Source: Haplodiscus bocki
Lineage: Eukaryota
Assembly (NCBI GenBank): GCA_965655095.1
Contig: OZ296650.1
Span: 69,068,001-69,132,000, forward strand
Direction: 5' to 3'
Length of the DNA: 64,000 nucleotides
Shown here: positions 7,800 through 16,885 of the stretch, piece by piece
How positions within the stretch are numbered: the stretch's first letter is position 1
Layout of the letters: each line of letters begins with the position of its first letter
The notes under the pieces: model-generated
Database searches by the model: none
What the model saw: only the letters and a program-made list of their open reading frames with translations
Told to the model about the DNA's origin: nothing
Translations under genes and position numbers: made by a program

Positions 7800-8800
7800 A
7801 AGAGCACAACATATTCCGTTGGTTCAGCCGAAATCAGCGATCAGTTGCGCAATTCAGATGACTACAGCTACAATCGAACTTATTGTTTTCCGTCGTACTG
7901 AGAAATTGGTAAGCTAAACCTTCAATTCAGTCAGTGGAACTTTTCCCCGCAAATTTGCCAATATCGCGTGAAACGTTGCATGAACTCTCGCTCACTGTTG
8001 CTGCTTTTTGATTAACTGCTAAAACACTAAGTAGAATTTAGACAAGTGAACAATGAAATGGGCAGTGGCCGCGGGATTACTCAACTCATGTAACGCTAGA
8101 AAGAGTTTTTCAATTAGTTATTTGAAAAAAATTTGAAAAGTTTCTTCTATCTTCTTCTTGAAGAGTTCCTTCCAACATTCGTATTTCATTTTTCTCCGGT
8201 CCTTGCGAAGGCAACAAGCAAATCCGGAATGATTTCGCTGAATGTCCCCTAATGTAGTTAATACAACCCAAGAAAGCCAAAACTTTTAATTGTCAAGTAT
8301 TTCTTCCATAAAGGTCTCAATCAACAGATTCCCGCCTGCACAATATTCTTCAAATATAATATTTTTGATTTTCTTTCTTGCATCGAAATCCTGATAGGTC
8401 AAAAAATACGGCAGAATGTAAGTAGTATGGATTTTTCTCAAATTTGGAATTAACCTTCCCCAAAATTTCCTGTTGGATTTCTTTCAAGGTTTCAACCGAC
8501 ATCTTTTTACTTAGAAAAGCTTCATCAGCTACGGTATCTTGTATCATTTCTTGCATGGAAATCCTGATATTCCGAAGATACCCAAAAGAGCAATTAGTAA
8601 AATTCGTTTTTCACCAAAACAACCTGCTACGTCTTCCATTTAGGTCTTCATTGACAACTTTCTACTTGCAGGTTTTTGCTATAAGCATATTTCGTTGCAT
8701 CGGAAACCAGATTAACCAAATAGTGGAAATTTTCGATGTTGAAACTCATTTTTACTCCAAAATTACCGTCTGGTTTTCTATCATCATGGTCTCAATTGAA
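7800..8800 (-). pseudogene. Decayed coding relic of a ~59-aa tandem-repeat protein (copy 1)
   Basis: Minus strand gives LPYFLTYQDFDARKKIKNIIFEEYCAGGNLLIETFMEEI (~8415-8300), EYQDFHARND (~8575), VETLKEIQQEIL (~8495), IETMMIENQTVIL...EFQHR (~8795); matches the consensus of the 48-50 kb array. Confidence 0.55.
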
Positions 8801-9034
8801 AGTTGCTTACTGGCTCCTTCTCTTTGTAACTGTTAATGCATTTTTGATCATTTCTTTTCAAATTTGTGAAAAATCGCAGTGGCTTTGCACTTGTTCACGT
8901 GCTCCTAGCAAAGATCAAAGTAGGGCGACATTGAATCCGCACTAGATGTGAAATTGTACAGGCTCCTACAATGTACTTTTCTTCAGTGATGGAATGTTTT
9001 ACTCTGAGTTTGGCGTTAGCGGGAGAGTATAACA

Positions 9035-9430
9035 CAGAGATGAAACTGGGTCCAGGGTCTATGGGTCAACCCATACAAAATTTAAGAATGGGTCAACTGG
9101 GTCCAGGGTCTAAATTTAAACTTAATTGAAATAAGATTGTTAACGAGTGAGCTGTGGACTGCTCGACCAATCAAGCAAAGCTTTCTCAAGTGTTATTCGG
9201 TACGAGAACTTGAGACACATTCTGCGTGAAAGGCTAAAATTGAGTTATATTACACCAATTGATATTGGCCTTGTCAATCAAATTTCTGCGTTTTTGAAAC
9301 CTGTAACTAAATTGTTTGACAAGCTTGAAGGAGTTTTGACTTTTTTCAATTAGTTTGCTGGGTCCAGGGTCAGGGTTCATTTGGGTCACATGGGTCCAGG
9401 GTCAACAAAAGTGACCCAGTTTCATCTCTG
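9035..9430 (+). mobile_element. Non-autonomous hAT transposon (internal-deletion derivative)
   Basis: 18-bp perfect TIR CAGAGATGAAACTGGGTC; perfect 8-bp TSD GTATAACA (9027-9034, 9431-9438); four TGGGTCCAGGGTC subterminal repeats; internal transposase-like fragment (ISAFLKPVTKLFDKLEG). Confidence 0.92.
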
Positions 9431-9973
9431 GTATAACAACAGCAGAAACCCGTGTTATGGGCTGACGTATTAAATAGAGCATTATTGTCTCGTTCTGTAA
9501 AGGATAACAGCAAGATTTGTAAACTGTTCATTCTGAACAATATTCTTTCTAGTCTGTGGCTGCTCAAGGAATTTTTTTCCGAATGAAGCTTCGTGTTGAA
9601 ATTCAAGACGGCTTCAGGTTTTTTGTTATGATCAGATGACTTCACTTTCAGAAAGAATTAGCACTTCCAGGTGTTAGTGAAAGAATTTTCCTCTTTTCTG
9701 TCCACTCCAAGCTGCTCAGTAATAATCCTTTCTTTCATAAATCTGAGCGTTTTGACCTACGGATTGGAGCAATTAACGTTCTTTTTCATTTCATTTTTGG
9801 ACGGCTACTAATTTACCAAATTTGCTGCTGGACTTGAGTCAGTGACAAAAACGCGTTGGTTCAGTCCTTTCGTTTGATTCTTCCGTAAATAACACTCAAG
9901 TTCACATTTACAAGTTCTGAATACAAATTTGAAAATAACTTCACCAGCCAATGTCATGTTACTAAATCTTTTT

Positions 9974-10159
9974 TCAACATTGAGTAATAAGTCTCCAGGG
10001 CACCAACGTTTCATCGTCTTTGTATTCAATGCAAACAGTCGCTTGTGAATTGTCTAGACTCATCCGTCCCGCATGGAGAATAGCTGTCACTTGCAAAGTA
10101 CTAGCAGCAGTTGGCAAACAGTTAACAAAATCTTCTGCACGCTTTTCTCCGTTATTAAT
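9974..10159 (-). CDS. GaaA-like oxidoreductase exon 5 (last; absent from the ORF track)
   Basis: Acceptor TTTTCTAG; INNGEKRAEDFVNCLPTAASTLQVTAILHAGRMSLD...ITQC*, matching the family C-terminus. Confidence 0.88.
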   Translation of the reverse strand: MNNGEKRAEDFVNCLPTAASTLQVTAILHAGRMSLDNSQATVCIEYKDDETLVPWRLITQC

Positions 10160-13100
10160 CTAGAAAACATAGGCAGCAAGTATGCTAGGCATTAAGTGCT
10201 TAGAGCCTAGATTTAGCATATTAAACATTTGTAATTGAGCGAAATTTGAACTATAATTTTGAAACAGAAAATAGATGCCAATTAAATCGACAAATTTTAG
10301 AACATTTGAATAAATTTGAATTACCACATGTACATAAAAATGAAGGGTGAATAGCGACGTAAATGGCAATAAGAGGCAGAATACTTTCTCCACGTATTAA
10401 CTTTCATTGACTTCTATTTACTTCGACAAAAAGTATCCATCCTCTCTCAAAATGATCCAATGGATATTTGCGGTAGAATGGAAGCGCAATAGAAAGATTT
10501 CTCAAAAACGTACGGAATCAAAGAAACTTGAATTGTTTTAGAATCAGTAAAGGTGACACATTTGCTGTAAAAAATTTTGGAGATATCTTTTTCCACCTTT
10601 ATTCAGGTTGCACAAAAATACAGAAATTTTTTGAGATTCGAAAAACTTAAATTTTGATGAAGCTTCTTTCCAAAATGTACGCCTTCATTGTTTTAAGCGG
10701 TATCTTTAACAAAAATGGAGGGCGCAAATATCCCGGTGGTAGGCGGGTGTCTGCTTACCTTTTGATCTCAAATCGTTTTTATCAAGGTTTCTCCCATTAC
10801 GACTTTAAGACGTCATTGAAAGCTCGGGATGCTGCGTTTGTTCGAGTTGTACTTATGTCGGAGGACCAAGTTGGTAAATGCAGTGTCACGAACAACTTTT
10901 CTGTGACCGTGTCGTTGAAACAAGATTGCTGAAAATCCGTGCTCCAGAAAACGGTGTGTTCGACGGGGTACAGTGAAGAGTTTCCAAAATCGACTACTGA
11001 CAAAAGAGCTACACGAGGCATACACGAGGATCGGAACACATACCACTGCAGTAGAGGACGCAAGAAATAACCTCCAGTATGCTTGTTAATGTCTGTATGT
11101 GTTTACTCTCAATTGTAAAAGAGAGACCAGAAAAGTATTTCAACTGAAGGAAGGCAAAAAATTGCAATGGTTATCGACGGAACAAGAATAACCCTTCAGA
11201 ACTGTTAATTAAAACGGAAGAAAATTGGGGAAAATGACAGTACCTGATTTCGTTGTCATTTTCTCACTTGGTCCACTGTTATGACCAAGTTCAAGGATAT
11301 ACATTTTCAGCTGAATTCGATAATTTCCTGAAGCAATTTTCACAAGACGACGACTCACAAAAAGACTTAAATGCAGCAGCAGTGACGTACCGTAAGAAAG
11401 CAAAGCGCCAGAAACAAAATAAAAATCGCATGAGATCTATCATGAATTTCTCGAGAAACCACGCAGCAGCGGTGCACAACCCGCGAAAATGTATGGTCTT
11501 GTCAAAGTACACAAATCGGGTTTTCCTCTGACACCAGTCTAGTCCTTGCCTGGTAGTAGGTACAAGCGCTTCACGAATCAACTGCCCGAGATGATTATCT
11601 GCCGGGAGCAGGAAATGAGGCGTCTAATCAAACTATTCGTGACCAAGTTCGTACGATGACGCAAGATGAAGACGAGGAGCTTATATCTTTGAACCTTAAA
11701 AGTCTCTATACCAACGTGCCCGTTGATGAGGCAATCACCGTAGCAGCTGAAAAACTTTACTCCACTTCAAGTTACTCGAATAAAATTTTGAATTGATGAA
11801 ATTTGCAGTCAAGAATGTGAAATTTGAGGTCGGTGACACACGGTTGGAACAAGTTGGTGGCTTAACCATGGACTCTACTTAGCCAACTCATGGATGAAAG
11901 AATTTGAGCCTTTACTTGGTGGAACATCACACACAGAGAACACCGAGGTGCCCTCTGAGGAACTCGGTGGACCACCACACATACAAGACACGGCAATGCT
12001 TTTTGACAAACCATCTCAAACATTAGATAGCTGTGGGAGCAGGGTCACTCGGCGACGATACTCAGTGCAACGTAGCAGGTGCGAGTATTGGTGCCATTGA
12101 AACTGCTTAGGCTATAGCGTAGCATATATTCGCAATGTGACATCATGCTCCTGGCATTGCGGTCGTACGAGTTTGCCGAACCCGTGATGAAACCTGCGAA
12201 AACTTTCCACAGATACATGGATGATATTTTTTTTTCAATGAAGGTTGACAAAATCCCTGACGTATTATCGAAGAACAATGACATCAATCCAAATCTCGAA
12301 TCCACGTTAGAAGAGTCAGGTGAGTTAGCGGTTCTAGATACGAAAATTGTTCGTTCCGGACGAATGTTGAGCTCCACCAGGTACCAGAAACCAACCGATA
12401 CTGGTCTTTGATTATCGTCTCTCGCTTGTGCCCCCAACATATAAGAGGAACACAGTGGAGGGCATAGTGCATAGATTGCACCACTTTTGGTACAAATGAG
12501 AGCATTTCCATTCCAGCCTAGAGAAAGCGAGGGGCTTCTCAGAGGTAAACCACAATCCAGCATCGTACTGCAATCCGATAATCAAAAGTGTCCTGGAAAA
12601 ACTCTCACAGGAAGAAAATGACAAATAATTTTGAAACCAGCTAGTCAAAACGAAGAAGCGAAAGGCCCACATTAGCAATTCTTTATCGGGGATATATTTC
12701 ACAGTTTCAACAAAAATTACCAAAAATCGTACCAACTGCCACTATTTTCACCACCACAAAGATGCGATTTGTAGTGCCACCAATAAAAAGGGGTACTGTT
12801 GAGGAGTGTTCCAGCCGTGTCGTCTAAAACCTTACATGTACAGGTTGCTTGGCCTGCCATGTCGGTCAGACGACTCGACATTTCAAAACACGTCTGTGTG
12901 AACACCTCAACTCCAATGCCTCCTTTAAACAATAACTGCATCAATGCGATTCCACTTACACCTCCGAAATCCTGGACAGTGGTACAAATATCGGAACTTA
13001 CTCACACTGGAAGCCTTTTATACTGACCTATTGAAACCTGGTATCAACACATAAGAGGAATACCGCCACCGTTCCTGACAGTGAAGTTATGTTTTTGCAA

Positions 13101-15732
13101 TGATATAGTCACCTTTCGTTCTCTATCAGAACTCATAATTCAGCAGAATATAAAGCTATTTTTGTAGTTTCAGATAAATGATGAAGTTTTCGCATCGAAA
13201 ACGTTTTATAGTGTATTATTATTTCTAATTTACCATTCGTTTCAACATTGATACCTATTTTGGAAAGAATAAAAATGATTAATAGGCAGGGACCATTCCG
13301 ATTCAATTCAGCGATCAGCCTCACTCAGTCGGTTAATCAAGCAGACCTTTGTGGGAAGAGTAAAATCTACAGGCATTAAGTTACACTTCATACCTAAAAA
13401 TCTGAAGATCAAGTTTTCAAACTACTTTTCTAACTTTTGCAACTAAATATTTTAGCAGTATTAGCAAAAACTTGAAATTTTTTCCACATTCAGTTTAAGA
13501 ACAGGCTGTCTCTTCAACTTTTAAAATTTTCAAAACAAATATTCAAGGATCTTTTCCCTGATTTTTTCATCAGTTTCAAATAACTAACTAGTAATGGGAG
13601 AAAAATTGCGAAATATAGTTGAGAAATAAATGTACCTGACGAGCAGCAAGGATGAATTTTTCGAAGCTTTGATAACCATAACCAGCTTGTCCGTTGTAAT
13701 ATCCATCAGAATCTGTTGTATACTTCATGTAAAGAGGATTCACAGATTTATAACCATCTGCATCCGTAGAAACAAAGTATCCACGGTGAGCCTGAAAGAA
13801 ACCAGAAGTTGAATTTATACGTTTAAGCAATAGAGAATCAAATTGCAGCTATACGAAGAACATTACGAATCATTTCCCCATTGGCCCAACAACGATGAGC
13901 AGAATGCAGTTGCCGTAAATAAATCTGGCTTGAACTGTTTACGTAAAGTTACGTAGCATAAGCCGAGAGGATACAATTGTAATATAGTTATTTGAAAATT
14001 ACAATTTTTCATTCAATTAACAACAAATCAATCAATATTTTGGAAATTCAAGACGAGTCTCTAAACCCAGGACACTTTTCGAGATGCATAAAAGCTTAGA
14101 TTTGGTCACTTTTTTAGATTATATTTATCAAAATTTACAAACAGACAAAGCTCAGCTCCTAAGATACATAGAAGCCCCATTTGACCTTATTTTTATCACC
14201 AATAAGTTGATTGAAATAAACTTCACAACCATTTTTTTCAACAATCGTTTAAAATAGTCAACAAACGTTCAAAATTCATCACACCTGGTCCGCTTTCAGA
14301 GATCCGTGATATGCTTGGCAATAGAAATACTGCTGGCTATGAACATCGGATATTGGATCAGTCCATGAGGCTGTGTATACAGCATGGGCTTTGTTTTTAG
14401 AGGGCAAGTTTTCCCATTGAACCATCAGGGTTATGGTGTCCTCACAGGTGCGTCCGTCATTGAAACGAGTAATTGCTACTCCTTCCGAGGAACATGACCT
14501 GACAGTTAAAGGTCGCCCTCTACCAGCCATAGCCCAAACATGCCAGTCTATGTGATGAGAGTTTAAATAAAAACTGATGTCACTCGAAATCCCAGCCCAC
14601 GCCTAAATCCAATTCACACTAGCATTATCAGCATTCCACAACAAAGCGAATTCGACCAGTTTTTCACAACATTTCAAAAACATGGACGAGAAACATTCAA
14701 TTGGAAGATTTTTTTGCACCATTAATTTGCCTAACTATTACAGCTTGACAGTAATCTTACACATCTAGATTAAAAAGAATACACACTATCAATACGCCAG
14801 AATGTCTAAATATCGGCAAATCACAATTAAGTTAGAAGTATGCTGAACTCCGTAAAAGTGCCCCAAAATAAAACTGTTAACTCTAACTCTAAACGTGTCT
14901 AGTTGGAACTTGGGTTGACTCATGTAGGAATGGAAATATCCAAAGTCTCCCAGGTCCCCTGAGTTCAGTCTTTGCCGTGCATCTGCGTAGATTGGGTCGA
15001 ACCGTTTATGTACTTCAACTAAAAGGAGCCTATTCTTCGCACGAGATAAATCGACTAATGCGCGATGTTCTTCCAACTTCAGCACTAAAGGCTTCGCAAC
15101 CATGACGTGACATCCGGCTTCCAAAGCAGAACGTGCCATTTCGAAGTGAGAGTCATCTGGGGTGAATATTGATACCACATCTCCTAAGGAGAAAATTCAT
15201 TTCAACACCAACACTGCTTTTATGTAACCGACCAATACTGAAGATTAGATTTTTTTTCCAGTCTACAGAAGCATAATTAGTTATTCAAAACTTTCATATT
15301 ACGTAACTAACTAGGACTTTAAGCGGTGCTCAGGATAATTCTTGTTTATCTTCATTATTTTGCCCTCATCTGTAATCGAGTAATGTTTTTACCTTTTCTC
15401 AATTGTTTCATGGCATTTCTGTACGCTTCGAGATCTCTGCTCGTTTCATCATTTGGAAACGTTTCACAATCCGCGCTCAGCTCTCTGTACCTTCCCTCAA
15501 TAAGTTTTTGCCAGTGCAATCTCACAGCTGGAAATTTTGTGCCATTCGTGCCAGCAACTAAAATTCTGTCGCCAAGCAACCCCCTCCTTCTCAAATCAAA
15601 GTGCACAAGACCAACAACTCCGCAGGATTTGTCTGACTTTGAACCACCGCTTCCAATGACATAGCCTGTCACGTATTCCCCCGTCCCTATGATCAAAGCG
15701 TTGGGTGCATGGTGAGTCGAAACTTCGCCCAT
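9974..15732 (-). CDS. Gfo/Idh/MocA-family oxidoreductase, GaaA (D-galacturonate reductase)-like; 5 exons, 431 aa
   Basis: Exons 15732-15393, 15183-14888, 14602-14285, 13791-13636, 10159-9974; all GT-AG with matching phases, 1296 nt, no internal stop. Motifs IIGTGEYVTGY, SDKSCGVVGL..FDLRRRG, IFTPDDSH, KP, EVHKRFDPIY, YMSQPKFQLDTF.AWAG..SDISFYLNSHHID, EDTITL, VHSQQYF, NPLYMKY..D..G...GQ.GYGY.SFEKF, LPT...TAILHAGR.SLD match Aspergillus GaaA as I recall it. Confidence 0.92.
10770..13210 (+). mobile_element. Penelope-like retroelement (RT plus C-terminal GIY-YIG), decayed, antisense in intron 4 of the GaaA-like gene
   Basis: N-terminal RTKLVNAVSRTTFL...SFQNRLLTKEL; RT motifs ISLNLKSLYTNVPVDEAI (~11680-11735), QVGGLTMDS..AN.WMKEFE, RYMDDIF (~12211), LAVLD, YQKPTDTG; GIY-YIG VV*NLTCTGCLACHVGQTTRHFKTRLCEH (~12820-12905). 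Boundaries approximate. Confidence 0.9.
13636..13791 (-). CDS. GaaA-like oxidoreductase exon 4
   Basis: Acceptor TTTCAG; AHRGY...NPLYMKY...SFEKFILAARQ; donor GTACAT. Confidence 0.9.
14285..14602 (-). CDS. GaaA-like oxidoreductase exon 3
   Basis: Acceptor TTTAG; AWAGISSDISFYLNSHHID...KADQ; donor GTGTGA. Confidence 0.9.
14888..15183 (-). CDS. GaaA-like oxidoreductase exon 2
   Basis: Acceptor CCTTAG; GDVVSIFTPDDSH...QLDTFR; donor GTTAGA. Confidence 0.9.
15393..15732 (-). CDS. GaaA-like oxidoreductase exon 1
   Basis: ATG at 15732; Rossmann IIGTGEY; donor GTAAAA, phase 1. Confidence 0.9.
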
Positions 15733-16885
15733 ATTTTGATAGGCGTCGCCAATTAATCAAATCTAATTATGTATCAAAATAGAATTTTAATTGCATATAC
15801 TTTCTAGAAGGGTTCAAAAGCTTACTCATATAAGATCTGCAATGACTCGGAGTAACTTATCTTGACTTTCTATTTACATTGATGCCTTCAAATTTATTAT
15901 GCTGCTTGATAATGGTTCGTAGGCTAAATCGCAAATAGAACTTTCATGTTAAGAGTTGAGGTAATTAACACAGCATATAAAACAATAAACTTAACAAATC
16001 TCGAATTCTTTTATGCTATGCTTATTATCCTAAGCTGGATGGAATTAACAATTTTTCAATTCCAAAATTCGATATCGCAAAAAAATCTCATTTATTACAC
16101 GCATATTTTAACTTGGACGTTATATCGAACGAGAATCGCAAAGTGTCACCTCAGTTTCAATTGTCCGATATTCAAGATCATTTATTTATAACTCCTCGAA
16201 TTCCTTCTGGAACAAAAATTTCGCTTAATCTAAAAAATTTCAAATTTATTTTGATTAATTTTGAAAAATTCAGCTTAATCTATATATAACAATCGAAGTT
16301 GCTTCAAAGTAGAGTCGTGGAAGATTTAACAAGCCAGAAGAACTGAGTTGGTATGACGCAAAATTTTGCAGATTTCGATGGCTTGAAAGAGCCAGTAGTA
16401 ATCTGGACCTTTCTCAAAGTGCCAAATTAAGATAGATACATGCTTTCACTTCACGTTTCGAAATCAAGTTTTCGTTGACAAGCAGTTTGGTCGTTGAGTA
16501 CAGGTGTGCTCAAAACCTTGACCAGCATTTGTAAATTATCCTAAAAAGTTTGCTGCAATTTTTGATTCAATGCTTAGCTAAAGCAAAAAGTCAACTATTA
16601 CAAGACAAGGTAACCAGGCAGTTTAACGCGACGTTTCAGGTATAATATTTCAGAAATAGTCCTGTACGCAAGAATTCCGAAGTTCGACATTATGATGATT
16701 ATCAAAGTATTCAGAAACAGTTAGGGCTGTTAGTTCGCGGCTCAACGACAATTCGGAGGAAAAACCAAATTCAAACCGAATTTAAAATTTGGCCCCAATC
16801 ATTTCGCTAATTACTTAACTAGCAAATAACCCTTAGCCAATTTATTCATTGAAAATAAAACAGCCTTGCAACCAGTTCTGATATA

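What the first reader, a model, noticed from the sequence alone, without database searches (positions are those of the whole stretch)
11894..12190. PHD-finger-like module inserted inside the Penelope reverse transcriptase
Seen: between RT motif B' (QVGGLTM...WMKEFE) and motif C (RYMDD), normally a short linker, there are ~95 extra codons: a spacer with a small internal repeat (LGGTSH/LGGPPH), then DSCGSRVTRRRYSVQRSRCEYWCH*NCLGYS....VTSCSWHCGR. Two expected Cys are CGT (one transition from TGT) and the stop is TGA (one transition from CGA), restoring a C4HC3-like pattern (VQCxxCxxWxHxxC...WxCxC); the first Cys is not visible. Established: PHD fingers read histone tails and occur in some LINE ORF1 and gag proteins. 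I know of no described case inside an RT palm. Inference: a chromatin-reader-equipped Penelope RT that could guide insertion.
Basis: partly seen in the sequence, partly recalled or inferred. Interest (0 to 1): 0.72.

Follow-up and report, generated by a model that had tools for sequence, protein, structure and literature searches.

The report
PHD finger inside Penelope reverse transcriptase
A dead copy of a Penelope-like jumping gene carries the remains of a genuine Pygopus-type PHD zinc finger placed inside its reverse transcriptase. The same layout defines a whole old lineage of such elements, some recently mobile in this genome, and the finger is probably a chromatin- or partner-docking module.

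Summary
Window 11423-13072 (+) is a 5'-truncated, heavily frameshifted Penelope-like element (PLE). Between RT motif B and motif C it holds about 90 extra codons instead of the usual short linker (35 residues from the motif-B Gln to RYxDD).

- **In the window:** the extra stretch is a decayed C4HC3 PHD finger. Five of eight zinc ligands survive, two now read CGT, and one was lost with a 9-nt deletion.
- **A lineage trait:** four older copies and a 95-98%-identical young family in the same genome share the insert. The young family has open frames up to 775 codons and 9-13 bp target-site duplications. PLE proteins in at least four other public assemblies and an acoel share it too.
- **Conservation:** all eight ligands, the Trp before the His and a Val are conserved.
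- **Domain identity:** relatives pass Pfam PHD. The profile and the predicted fold match Pygopus PHD fingers best.
- **Origin:** with the insert removed, PHD-bearing RTs form one group (support 100).

Histone reading and guided insertion remain inference. Some histone-contact residues are kept and others are replaced.

PHD inserts in PLE RTs are already published for algal Chlamys elements, at a different site, so this is a new variant. The scan reached the same reading on other DNA of this genome (s1-364293, s1-356358).

The parts
11423..13072 (+). Decayed, 5'-truncated copy of a Penelope-like element (RT plus C-terminal GIY-YIG endonuclease). It has at least 7 frame changes and several in-frame stops.
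   Evidence: tblastn of open PHD+ PLE ORFs (L024 ORF, P0003, P0006, P0010) covers 11423-13072, starting at about residue 215 of 775.
11486..11539 (+). RT motifs 1/2 (KMYGLVKVHKSGFPLTPV)
   Evidence: Translation. These columns are nearly invariant in alignment A2.
11680..11736 (+). RT motif A / RT3 (LISLNLKSLYTNVPVDEAI)
   Evidence: The D, Y, T and V columns are invariant in A2.
11844..11908 (+). RT motif B / RT4 (LEQVGGLTM) and its helix ending in WMKEFE. A frameshift lies inside this stretch.
   Evidence: Corresponds to Q156-E180 of the L018 ORF model, helix 165-176.
11909..12025 (+). Variable N-terminal linker of the insert, with two copies of an 18-nt unit (11915-11932 and 11963-11980)
   Evidence: Both units are also present in L002 and L003 (A3). 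The linker is unconserved across families (A1) and has low pLDDT in the model (block 191-200: 63).
12026..12166 (+). Remnant of the PHD finger (C4HC3). C1 is deleted; C2 12032; C3 position CGT 12071; C4 12080; Trp 12089; His 12095; TGA 12098; C6 12104; Trp 12152; C7 12158; C8 position CGT 12164.
   Evidence: Sister copy L002:1784-2134 scores 22.2 bits on Pfam PHD, E 1.4e-4. Relatives P0003 and P0006 pass the gathering score. The profile matches Pygo PHD at E 5.5e-11.
12167..12204 (+). C-terminal linker of the insert, containing the gaps that shift the frame (two stops at 12185-12190 in the PHD frame)
   Evidence: A3 shows a 3-nt and a 1-nt gap relative to L002.
12205..12234 (+). RT motif C / RT5 (FHRYMDDIFF)
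   Evidence: The Y, D, D columns are invariant in A2.
12325..12408 (+). RT motifs D/E region (LAVLDTKI ... STRYQKPTDTGL)
   Evidence: conserved columns in A2.
12828..13066 (+). GIY-YIG endonuclease remnant (NLTCTGCLACHVGQTTRHFKTRLCEH ... LTLEAFY ... EEYR)
   Evidence: Pfam GIY-YIG reaches its gathering score only on the PHD-less relative P0015 (22.8 against 22.6); the PHD+ ORFs give sub-threshold matches (L024 ORF 17.9, P0001 19.6 bits). tblastn comes.

Best explanation
**Shown.** The window holds a dead, 5'-truncated copy of a Penelope-like retroelement from a distinct lineage.
- In this lineage the single ORF carries a Pygopus-type PHD zinc finger. It is about 50 residues long, with C-x2-C ... 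C-x2-C-x2-W-x-H-x2-C ... W-x-C-x(1-2)-C.
- The finger is inserted on two flexible linkers between the motif B helix and the motif C hairpin of the reverse transcriptase.
- The insert is translated, was acquired once, and has been kept by purifying selection through deep divergence.
- One family with it moved recently in this genome by target-primed reverse transcription. The signs are a common 3' end, variable 5' truncation and 9-13 bp target-site duplications.

**Inferred.**
- The finger hangs off the back of the palm without disturbing catalysis.
- It acts as a docking module. Most likely it holds the RT/endonuclease-RNA particle on nucleosomes through the N-terminal tail of histone H3, with a methyl-lysine-type pocket built on the invariant Trp. 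This would bias or assist integration in chromatin.

My odds are about 0.95 that it is a real, selected PHD domain of a PLE lineage, and about 0.45 that its ligand is the H3 tail.
For: **The insert is shared.** It is present in four old sister copies and in several further families of the same genome. One young family has open frames of 367-775 codons.

**Database relatives.** 19 of the 120 listed relatives have a 97-125 residue B-to-C spacing with the same Cys/His pattern, against 35 residues in 100 others.

**Ligand conservation.** Ligands, Trp and Val are invariant or nearly so at 26-32% mean identity.

**Domain identity.**
- Pfam PHD scores 32.7 bits on P0003 and 26.4 on P0006, against a cut-off of 24.
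- The precomputed family on the relatives is PHD_Pygo.
- The profile hits Pygo PHD at E 5.5e-11. Alfin-like, MLL1 PHD3, BPTF and TAF3 follow, which I know as H3K4me readers; the KMT2C/MLL3 finger lower in the list is solved with histone H4.

**Predicted fold.**
- The 568-aa ORF model has pLDDT 89.6. The finger is confident (81-94) between low-confidence linkers (61-63).
- The whole model matches TERT best.
- The finger alone superposes on Pygo PHD at 1.4-1.8 A over 53-58 residues.

**Single origin.** A tree without the insert columns puts all 13 PHD+ RTs on one side of a branch, SH-aLRT 100, with one change.

**Recent mobility.** Young copies are 95-98% identical with TSDs.

**Pocket residues.** The equivalents of Pygo1 V350, A356, I357 and W366, which PMC2726290 shows to be needed for H3K4me binding, are conserved. 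An extra aromatic sits in the loop.
Against: **Function is untested.**
- The Pygo lip residue D352 is K/R/Y/F in most members (D only in P0005).
- The acidic residue after C3 (E360) is kept only in the CxxC subgroup, not in the window's 'CGC' subgroup.
- That subgroup's finger is strongly basic (net +3 to +10). A basic finger is unusual for a face that binds a basic histone tail and would also suit nucleic acid.

**Other gaps.**
- No RNA run of known kind was found, so translation of the insert rests on open frames and protein-level conservation.
- The window copy itself matches no Pfam family.
- No hammerhead ribozyme was detected.
Confidence: 0.5

Rival explanations
1. The insert is a real PHD-fold zinc module, but its ligand is not a histone tail. 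It could bind nucleic acid (target DNA or the element's RNA). It could also bind a host or element protein on its rear face, as the Pygo PHD binds BCL9 HD1. Or it could only stabilise the RT.
For: The window's subgroup is highly basic, with net charge +3 to +10. It has K/R in the loop where Pygo has the acidic EVND lip, and it lacks the acidic residue after C3. Pygo PHDs are known to use a second surface for a protein partner (PMC2726290). The finger sits inside a nucleic-acid enzyme.
Against: The invariant Trp, the Val base and the small residue of the K4me pocket are exactly the positions conserved across the clade. Nearly all of the closest sequence and structure matches are H3-tail readers; one, the MLL3 PHD6, is solved with histone H4.
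Confidence: 0.35
2. The extra stretch is an intron or other non-coding spacer that is removed from the mRNA. PLEs are known to retain introns.
For: The window copy changes frame between the insert and motif C. A CAG sits just before the motif C codons.
Against: The frame change is explained by a 1-nt gap relative to L002, which reads through in one frame. The insert is in frame and stop-free in dozens of divergent ORFs, and it is conserved as protein with invariant zinc ligands. Contigs of public runs span it without any joint (the kind of run is unknown).
Confidence: 0.01
3. The pattern is a chance Cys/His-rich stretch, or a copy-specific nested insertion of foreign DNA in this one dead copy.
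For: The window's pieces hit no Pfam family. Only 5 of 8 ligands are present.
Against: The same insert at the same place occurs in sister copies, other families and other organisms. PHD-bearing RTs form one group on a tree built without the insert.
Confidence: 0.01

Closest known systems
Chlamys Penelope-like elements of Chlamydomonas with PHD finger insertions (Craig et al. 2021, PMC8557442)
   Same: A PHD finger is inserted in frame inside the single PLE ORF, in some families inside the RT itself. The authors regard it as an accessory chromatin-related domain.
   Different: There the insert lies between RT2a and RT3(A), or inside the endonuclease. Those elements are algal, have an N-terminal GIY-YIG domain and lack the CCHH motif. 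Here the insert lies between RT4(B) and RT5(C) of animal elements with a C-terminal CCHH-bearing GIY-YIG. The gain is therefore independent and at another site.
Canonical C-terminal-EN PLEs of the Penelope/Poseidon type
   Same: [quoted passage not shown] There is no CX2-5CxxC linker finger. 5' truncation is also shared. Such elements are the nearest PHD-less relatives at 40-45% identity.
   Different: Canonical elements have a fixed 35-residue B-to-C spacing. This lineage has 97-125 residues with a folded zinc finger. No hammerhead ribozyme was detected here.
Pygopus PHD finger (hPygo1/2, Drosophila Pygo; PDB 2vpe, 2vpd, 2xb1, 3zpv)
   Same: It is the best sequence match (E 5.5e-11) and the best structure match (rmsd 1.4-1.8 A, 33-40% identity). 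The pattern CG-x-C...V......[AS]I-x-C-x2-C-x2-W[FY]HR-x-C is shared. The equivalents of V350, A356, I357 and W366 are kept.
   Different: The D352 lip and, in the window's subgroup, E360 are not kept. Loop 2 is shorter. The last ligand pair is C-x-C in one subgroup. The net charge is basic. The finger is embedded in an enzyme rather than at the C-terminus of a Wnt co-activator. Binding to a BCL9-like partner is unknown.
PHD fingers of other transposable elements (CR1-like non-LTR elements, Rehavkus DNA transposons; cited in PMC8557442)
   Same: A PHD finger serves as a recurrent accessory domain of mobile elements, presumed to deal with chromatin.
   Different: As I recall from the CR1 paper, which I did not read here, the finger there lies in a separate ORF1 protein and not inside the catalytic RT core. 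I did not compare these sequences.

Membership tests
PHD finger (Pfam PF00628) | Eight zinc ligands in C4HC3 order with canonical spacing | tested here: met
   The ligands are invariant or nearly so across 17 inserts (A1, A4). The last pair is C-x-C in one subgroup and C-x2-C in the other. In the window copy 5 of 8 ligands remain.
PHD finger (Pfam PF00628) | Profile score above the curated cut-off (24 bits) | tested here: met
   P0003 scores 32.7 bits and P0006 26.4 bits. Sister copy L002 scores 22.2 bits, below the cut-off. The window pieces give no hit. The feature is therefore met for the lineage but not for this dead copy.
PHD finger (Pfam PF00628) | PHD fold (two-strand sheet, cross-braced zinc sites, Trp before the His) | tested here: met
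   The AF2 finger core has pLDDT 84-90. Foldseek's best matches are Pygo, BPTF, AL3, MLL1 and TAF3 PHDs at rmsd 1.4-2.5 A. This is a prediction, not a solved structure.
PHD finger (Pfam PF00628) | Zinc binding and histone H3 tail binding | not testable with these tools
   This needs metal analysis and peptide binding assays.
Pygo-type PHD (Pfam PF27108 PHD_Pygo) | Match to the family profile | tested here: met
   Precomputed hits are on record for P0001-P0004, P0006, P0007, P0009, P0010, P0013, P0014, P0016 and P0026. Several of them are marked weak. The model is not in my local Pfam copy, so I did not rescore.
Pygo-type PHD (Pfam PF27108 PHD_Pygo) | EVND 'Pygo loop', with invariant V and D forming the K4me2 pocket base and lip (PMC2726290) | tested here: not met
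   V is invariant. D352 is replaced by K/R/N/T/Y/F/W in 15 of the 17 sequences, P0013 has a gap there, and only P0005 keeps D. The finger works like a Pygo-type PHD in fold, but it is not a Pygopus orthologue.
Penelope-like element (PLE) | Single ORF with a TERT-related RT (motifs 1-7) and an N-terminal DKG motif | tested here: met
   The motifs are in the window. DKG is present in the L024 ORF and nearly invariant in A2. The best structural match is Tribolium TERT.
Penelope-like element (PLE) | GIY-YIG endonuclease with internal CCHH | tested here: met
   The pattern C-x2-C...H...H lies in the C-terminal GIY-YIG. Pfam GIY-YIG scores are near or at the cut-off. The remnant in the window is at 12828-13066.
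Penelope-like element (PLE) | Hammerhead ribozyme in pseudo-LTRs; tandem or inverted copy structure | tested here: not met
   Rfam found no HHR at E <= 0.1-1 in window 8-16 kb, in 12 loci, or in four 10-kb regions around young copies. No pLTR was seen in two regions. Partial tandems are seen elsewhere, for example L009/L010, 2147 nt apart. Minimal HHRs may escape Rfam. Some PLE clades lack canonical HHRs (PMC8557442).
Penelope-like element (PLE) | Variable 5' truncation and target-site duplication | tested here: met
   The young family has a common 3' end, 5' ends at six different positions, and TSDs of 9-13 bp in L016, L018, L020 and L026.
Penelope/Poseidon clade | No CX2-5CxxC linker finger upstream of GIY-YIG (PMC8557442) | tested here: met
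   Only one Cys lies in the linker of the L024 and L018 ORFs and of the A2 consensus. Placement on a tree with named reference elements was not done.
Chlamys PHD-bearing PLEs | N-terminal endonuclease; PHD between RT2a and RT3(A) or inside the EN | tested here: not met
   Here the EN is C-terminal and the PHD lies between RT4(B) and RT5(C).

The most novel reading that the evidence does not exclude
A deep, still mobile lineage of animal Penelope-like elements has built a methyl-lysine-type histone H3 reader into the catalytic core of its reverse transcriptase. The polymerase itself would then dock on marked nucleosomes and choose where new copies land. That would be an enzyme-embedded chromatin reader steering target-primed reverse transcription. 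The PHD-less sister families in the same genome would serve as a natural control.
Probability: 0.3. Interest if true: 0.7.

Novelty: new variant of a known kind. Interest (0 to 1): 0.5.

Why it matters
How Penelope-like elements choose targets is poorly understood. Accessory chromatin domains are one of the few handles on that question.

This case is a folded reader domain placed between motif B and motif C of an RT. It is kept through deep divergence and is present in copies that moved recently. It shows that the RT palm tolerates a large insertion at this loop, and it gives a concrete, testable candidate for chromatin-guided retrotransposition.

The same genome holds PHD-bearing and PHD-less PLE families side by side, so insertion landscapes can be compared directly. 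The window copy itself is an ordinary dead repeat. The interest lies in the lineage, and the scan has already met that lineage elsewhere in this genome.

Tried and rejected
- **Pfam on the window's own pieces:** no family. The copy is too decayed, so the case had to be made from sister copies and relatives.
- **Intron reading:** rejected (see rivals).
- **Region-restricted word search with the insert:** found only 2 near-identical proteins and gave no taxonomy.
- **RNA evidence:** no run on record as RNA holds the young family. Contigs of four runs (kind unknown, or metagenomes) cover the insert without joints, which shows presence but not expression.
- **Complex prediction:** the finger with two zinc ions and this genome's own histone H3 tail (L042 residues 2-40) gave no verdict (score 0.28, mark 0.34). 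It counts neither for nor against binding.
- **Hammerhead ribozymes and pLTRs:** not found.
- **dN/dS between families:** not attempted, because synonymous sites are saturated at 30-68% protein identity.
- **Geometry of the finger relative to the active site:** could not be measured, because model coordinates are not exposed.
- **Big profile search (1.84 billion representatives):** not used. The word search answered the question, and no claim here rests on absence of protein relatives.
- **Two ORF pieces of the neighbouring putative gene** (13591-13830 and 14282-14530, minus strand): no Pfam hit.
Full report
**What is in the window**

Translation of 11200-13100 shows the ordered motifs of a Penelope-like element (PLE) RT and endonuclease scattered over three frames:
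- KMYGLVKVHKSGFPLTPV at 11486-11539
- LISLNLKSLYTNVPVDEAI at 11680-11736 (motif A)
- LEQVGGLTM at 11844-11876 (motif B) and WMKEFE at 11891-11908
- FHRYMDDIFF at 12205-12234 (motif C)
- STRYQKPTDTGL at 12373-12408
- a GIY-YIG remnant at 12828-13066

tblastn with open PLE ORFs covers 11423-13072, starting at about residue 215 of 775. The copy is therefore 5'-truncated and carries at least seven frame changes and several stops. It is a dead copy.

**The observation**

Between WMKEFE and RYMDD lie about 100 codons. They comprise:
- a linker with two 18-nt units (LGGTSH, LGGPPH);
- DSCGSRVTRRRYSVQRSRCEYWCH*NC...SWHCGR at 12026-12166;
- a short tail with two stops.

In 100 of 120 database relatives the distance from the motif-B Gln to RYxDD is exactly 35 residues, so about 90 codons here are extra.

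- Other copies read TGT where the window reads CGT: L002 at the third ligand, and L002, L004 and L005 at the eighth.
- L004 and L005 read CGA, and L002 reads CAA, where the window has TGA.
- The missing first Cys lies in a 9-nt stretch that is present in L002 and absent in the window.
- A 1-nt gap near 12184 explains why motif C is in another frame.

**It is a lineage trait, not a quirk of this copy**

The same genome (1.5 Gb) holds sister copies at 66-74% DNA identity with the same insert. The 117-codon stop-free stretch of L002 already gives Pfam PHD at E 1.4e-4, or 22.2 bits against a cut-off of 24.

A six-frame protein search found 26 places in several families. Among them is a young family with open frames of 367-775 codons. 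These read ...QRDGVAMGASLAVILANVWLKNYE...CGGCEKMVAKNSYAIQCSTCRSWFHRKC...NWLCGC...FGRYVDD.

Copies of that family are 95-98% identical. They share one 3' end, are truncated at six different 5' positions, and are flanked by 9-13 bp target-site duplications of unrelated sequence. This is the signature of recent target-primed reverse transcription without a fixed target motif.

PHD-less PLEs with a contiguous B-C region coexist in the genome.

**Relatives elsewhere**

The word search with one open ORF returned 309 proteins. Of the 120 listed, 19 have a B-to-C spacing of 97-125 residues with the same Cys/His pattern, and 100 have 35 residues.

These proteins come from at least four ENA assemblies, including a Tara Oceans marine metagenome. 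One cluster also includes an NCBI protein of the acoel Symsagittifera roscoffensis. Public runs that hold the young family include one coded organism and coral, coral-reef and marine metagenomes.

**Is it a PHD finger?**

Seventeen inserts were aligned, with a mean column identity of 26-32%.
- Invariant or nearly invariant are C-x2-C, a Val, C-x2-C, Trp, His, Cys, Trp and the last Cys pair.
- The last pair is C-x-C in one subgroup, which includes the window's family, and C-x2-C in the other.
- P0003 and P0006 pass the Pfam PHD cut-off at 32.7 and 26.4 bits. The precomputed annotation of these proteins names PHD_Pygo.

A profile of the inserts hits solved PHD fingers. Pygopus is first at E 5.5e-11. 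Alfin-like, MLL1 PHD3, BPTF and TAF3 follow.

AlphaFold2 of a 568-residue open ORF with 122 aligned sequences gives pLDDT 89.6 and pTM 0.84.
- The insert folds confidently (81-94) between two low-confidence linkers (61-63).
- It lies after the motif B helix (165-176) and before the motif C hairpin (268-280).
- The whole model matches Tribolium TERT best, as expected for a PLE RT.
- The finger alone superposes on Pygo PHD at 1.4-1.8 A over 53-58 residues with 33-40% identity.

**One origin**

On a maximum-likelihood tree of 63 RTs built with the insert cut out, all 13 PHD-bearing sequences lie on one side of a branch with SH-aLRT 100. That is one change of state, and none of 500 label shuffles gave as few. 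Paths within that group reach 1.7-1.9 substitutions per site, so the lineage is old and the finger has been retained throughout.

The root was not inferred. I read the change as a gain because the PHD-less relatives have a fixed short spacing and, to my knowledge, other PLE and TERT lineages lack such an insert.

**What it probably does**

In human Pygo1 the K4me2 pocket has W366, Y341 and D352 as walls and V350 and A356 as base. E360 and I357 hold the start of the H3 tail. Mutating W366, V350, A356, E360 or I357 abolishes binding (PMC2726290).

Compared with that, the PLE fingers show the following.

| Pygo1 position | State in the PLE fingers |
|---|---|
| V350, W366 | invariant |
| 356 | small residue |
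| 357 | hydrophobic |
| 352 or 355 | an extra Tyr or Phe in nearly all members |
| Y341 | kept only in some families |
| D352 | basic or aromatic in most members |
| E360 | acidic only in the CxxC subgroup |

The window's subgroup has a net charge of +3 to +10.

I therefore commit to a docking module. The H3 tail is the most likely ligand (about 0.45), and nucleic acid or a protein partner is the main rival (about 0.35).

The finger's place on the back of the palm, away from the cleft, is inferred from RT topology and the flexible linkers. It was not measured.

**Known or new**

Craig et al. 2021 (PMC8557442) describe PHD fingers inserted between RT2a and RT3(A), or inside the endonuclease, of algal Chlamys PLEs. 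They note PHDs in CR1-like and Rehavkus elements.

Full-text searches for Penelope with PHD finger, and for Pygopus with retrotransposon, gave nothing on an insert between motifs B and C of animal C-terminal-EN PLEs. The library lacks most subscription papers and Repbase notes. The linker upstream of the GIY-YIG lacks the CX2-5CxxC finger, which fits the Penelope/Poseidon type.

I class this as a new variant of a known kind.

The scan's own notebook shows the same feature noted at least seven times in this genome. Two follow-ups reached the same reading. I treat that as agreement, not as evidence.

**Limits**

Natural open copies made it unnecessary.
- No expression data of known kind were available.
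- No hammerhead ribozyme was found.
- The complex prediction with H3 gave no verdict.

Noticed in passing
L016, L018, L020, L026 (own genome: C4:118.94 Mb, C11:89.90 Mb, C11:73.17 Mb, C3:38.20 Mb): The young PHD+ PLE family has copies 95-98% identical. All end at ...CAAATCCTTTTTCCT(G), have different 5' truncation points, and carry 9-13 bp target-site duplications of unrelated sequence. This points to recent mobility without a fixed target motif or poly(A).
   Followed up: partly
own genome C2:117473973-117480125 (L049, L055-L057): PHD-less PLE fragments recur at a regular 1891-nt spacing (117476014, 117477905, 117479796), so part of a PLE forms a tandem array. This may relate to the scan's note on a PLE-derived macrosatellite (s1-369387), which I did not check.
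   Followed up: no
own genome C7:87491494 and C7:87493641 (L009, L010): Two identical-scoring PHD+ PLE matches of another family lie 2147 nt apart on the same strand. This is the partial-tandem arrangement typical of PLE insertions.
   Followed up: no
own genome C4:15.58-16.31 Mb and contig C37 (L037-L048): A very large tandem histone cluster has one H3 gene (136 aa, canonical [34 protein letters not shown] tail) every ~4.6 kb. At least 150 copies were scored.
   Followed up: no
window 11915-11932 and 11963-11980: An 18-nt unit (CTYGGTGGAMCAYCACAC) occurs twice in the linker before the finger. Both units are also in sister copies L002 and L003. It is a family-specific duplication in an otherwise unconserved, flexible linker.
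   Followed up: yes
window 13588-13830 and 14279-14530, minus strand: Two open stretches flank the PLE copy. They lie within a span (9974-15732) that another first-stage note calls an intron-containing reductase-like gene. If so, the PLE copy is intronic. The two pieces hit no Pfam family.
   Followed up: partly
window 8000-16000; loci L024, L018 and others; L033-L036: Rfam detects no hammerhead ribozyme at permissive thresholds around the dead copy or around young PHD+ copies. Canonical C-terminal-EN PLEs usually carry one.
   Followed up: partly
L080:1-936 (ENA assembly ERZ25878734): A second PHD+ PLE gene on the opposite strand abuts P0006 head to head. This is the inverted-pair arrangement known for PLE insertions.
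   Followed up: no
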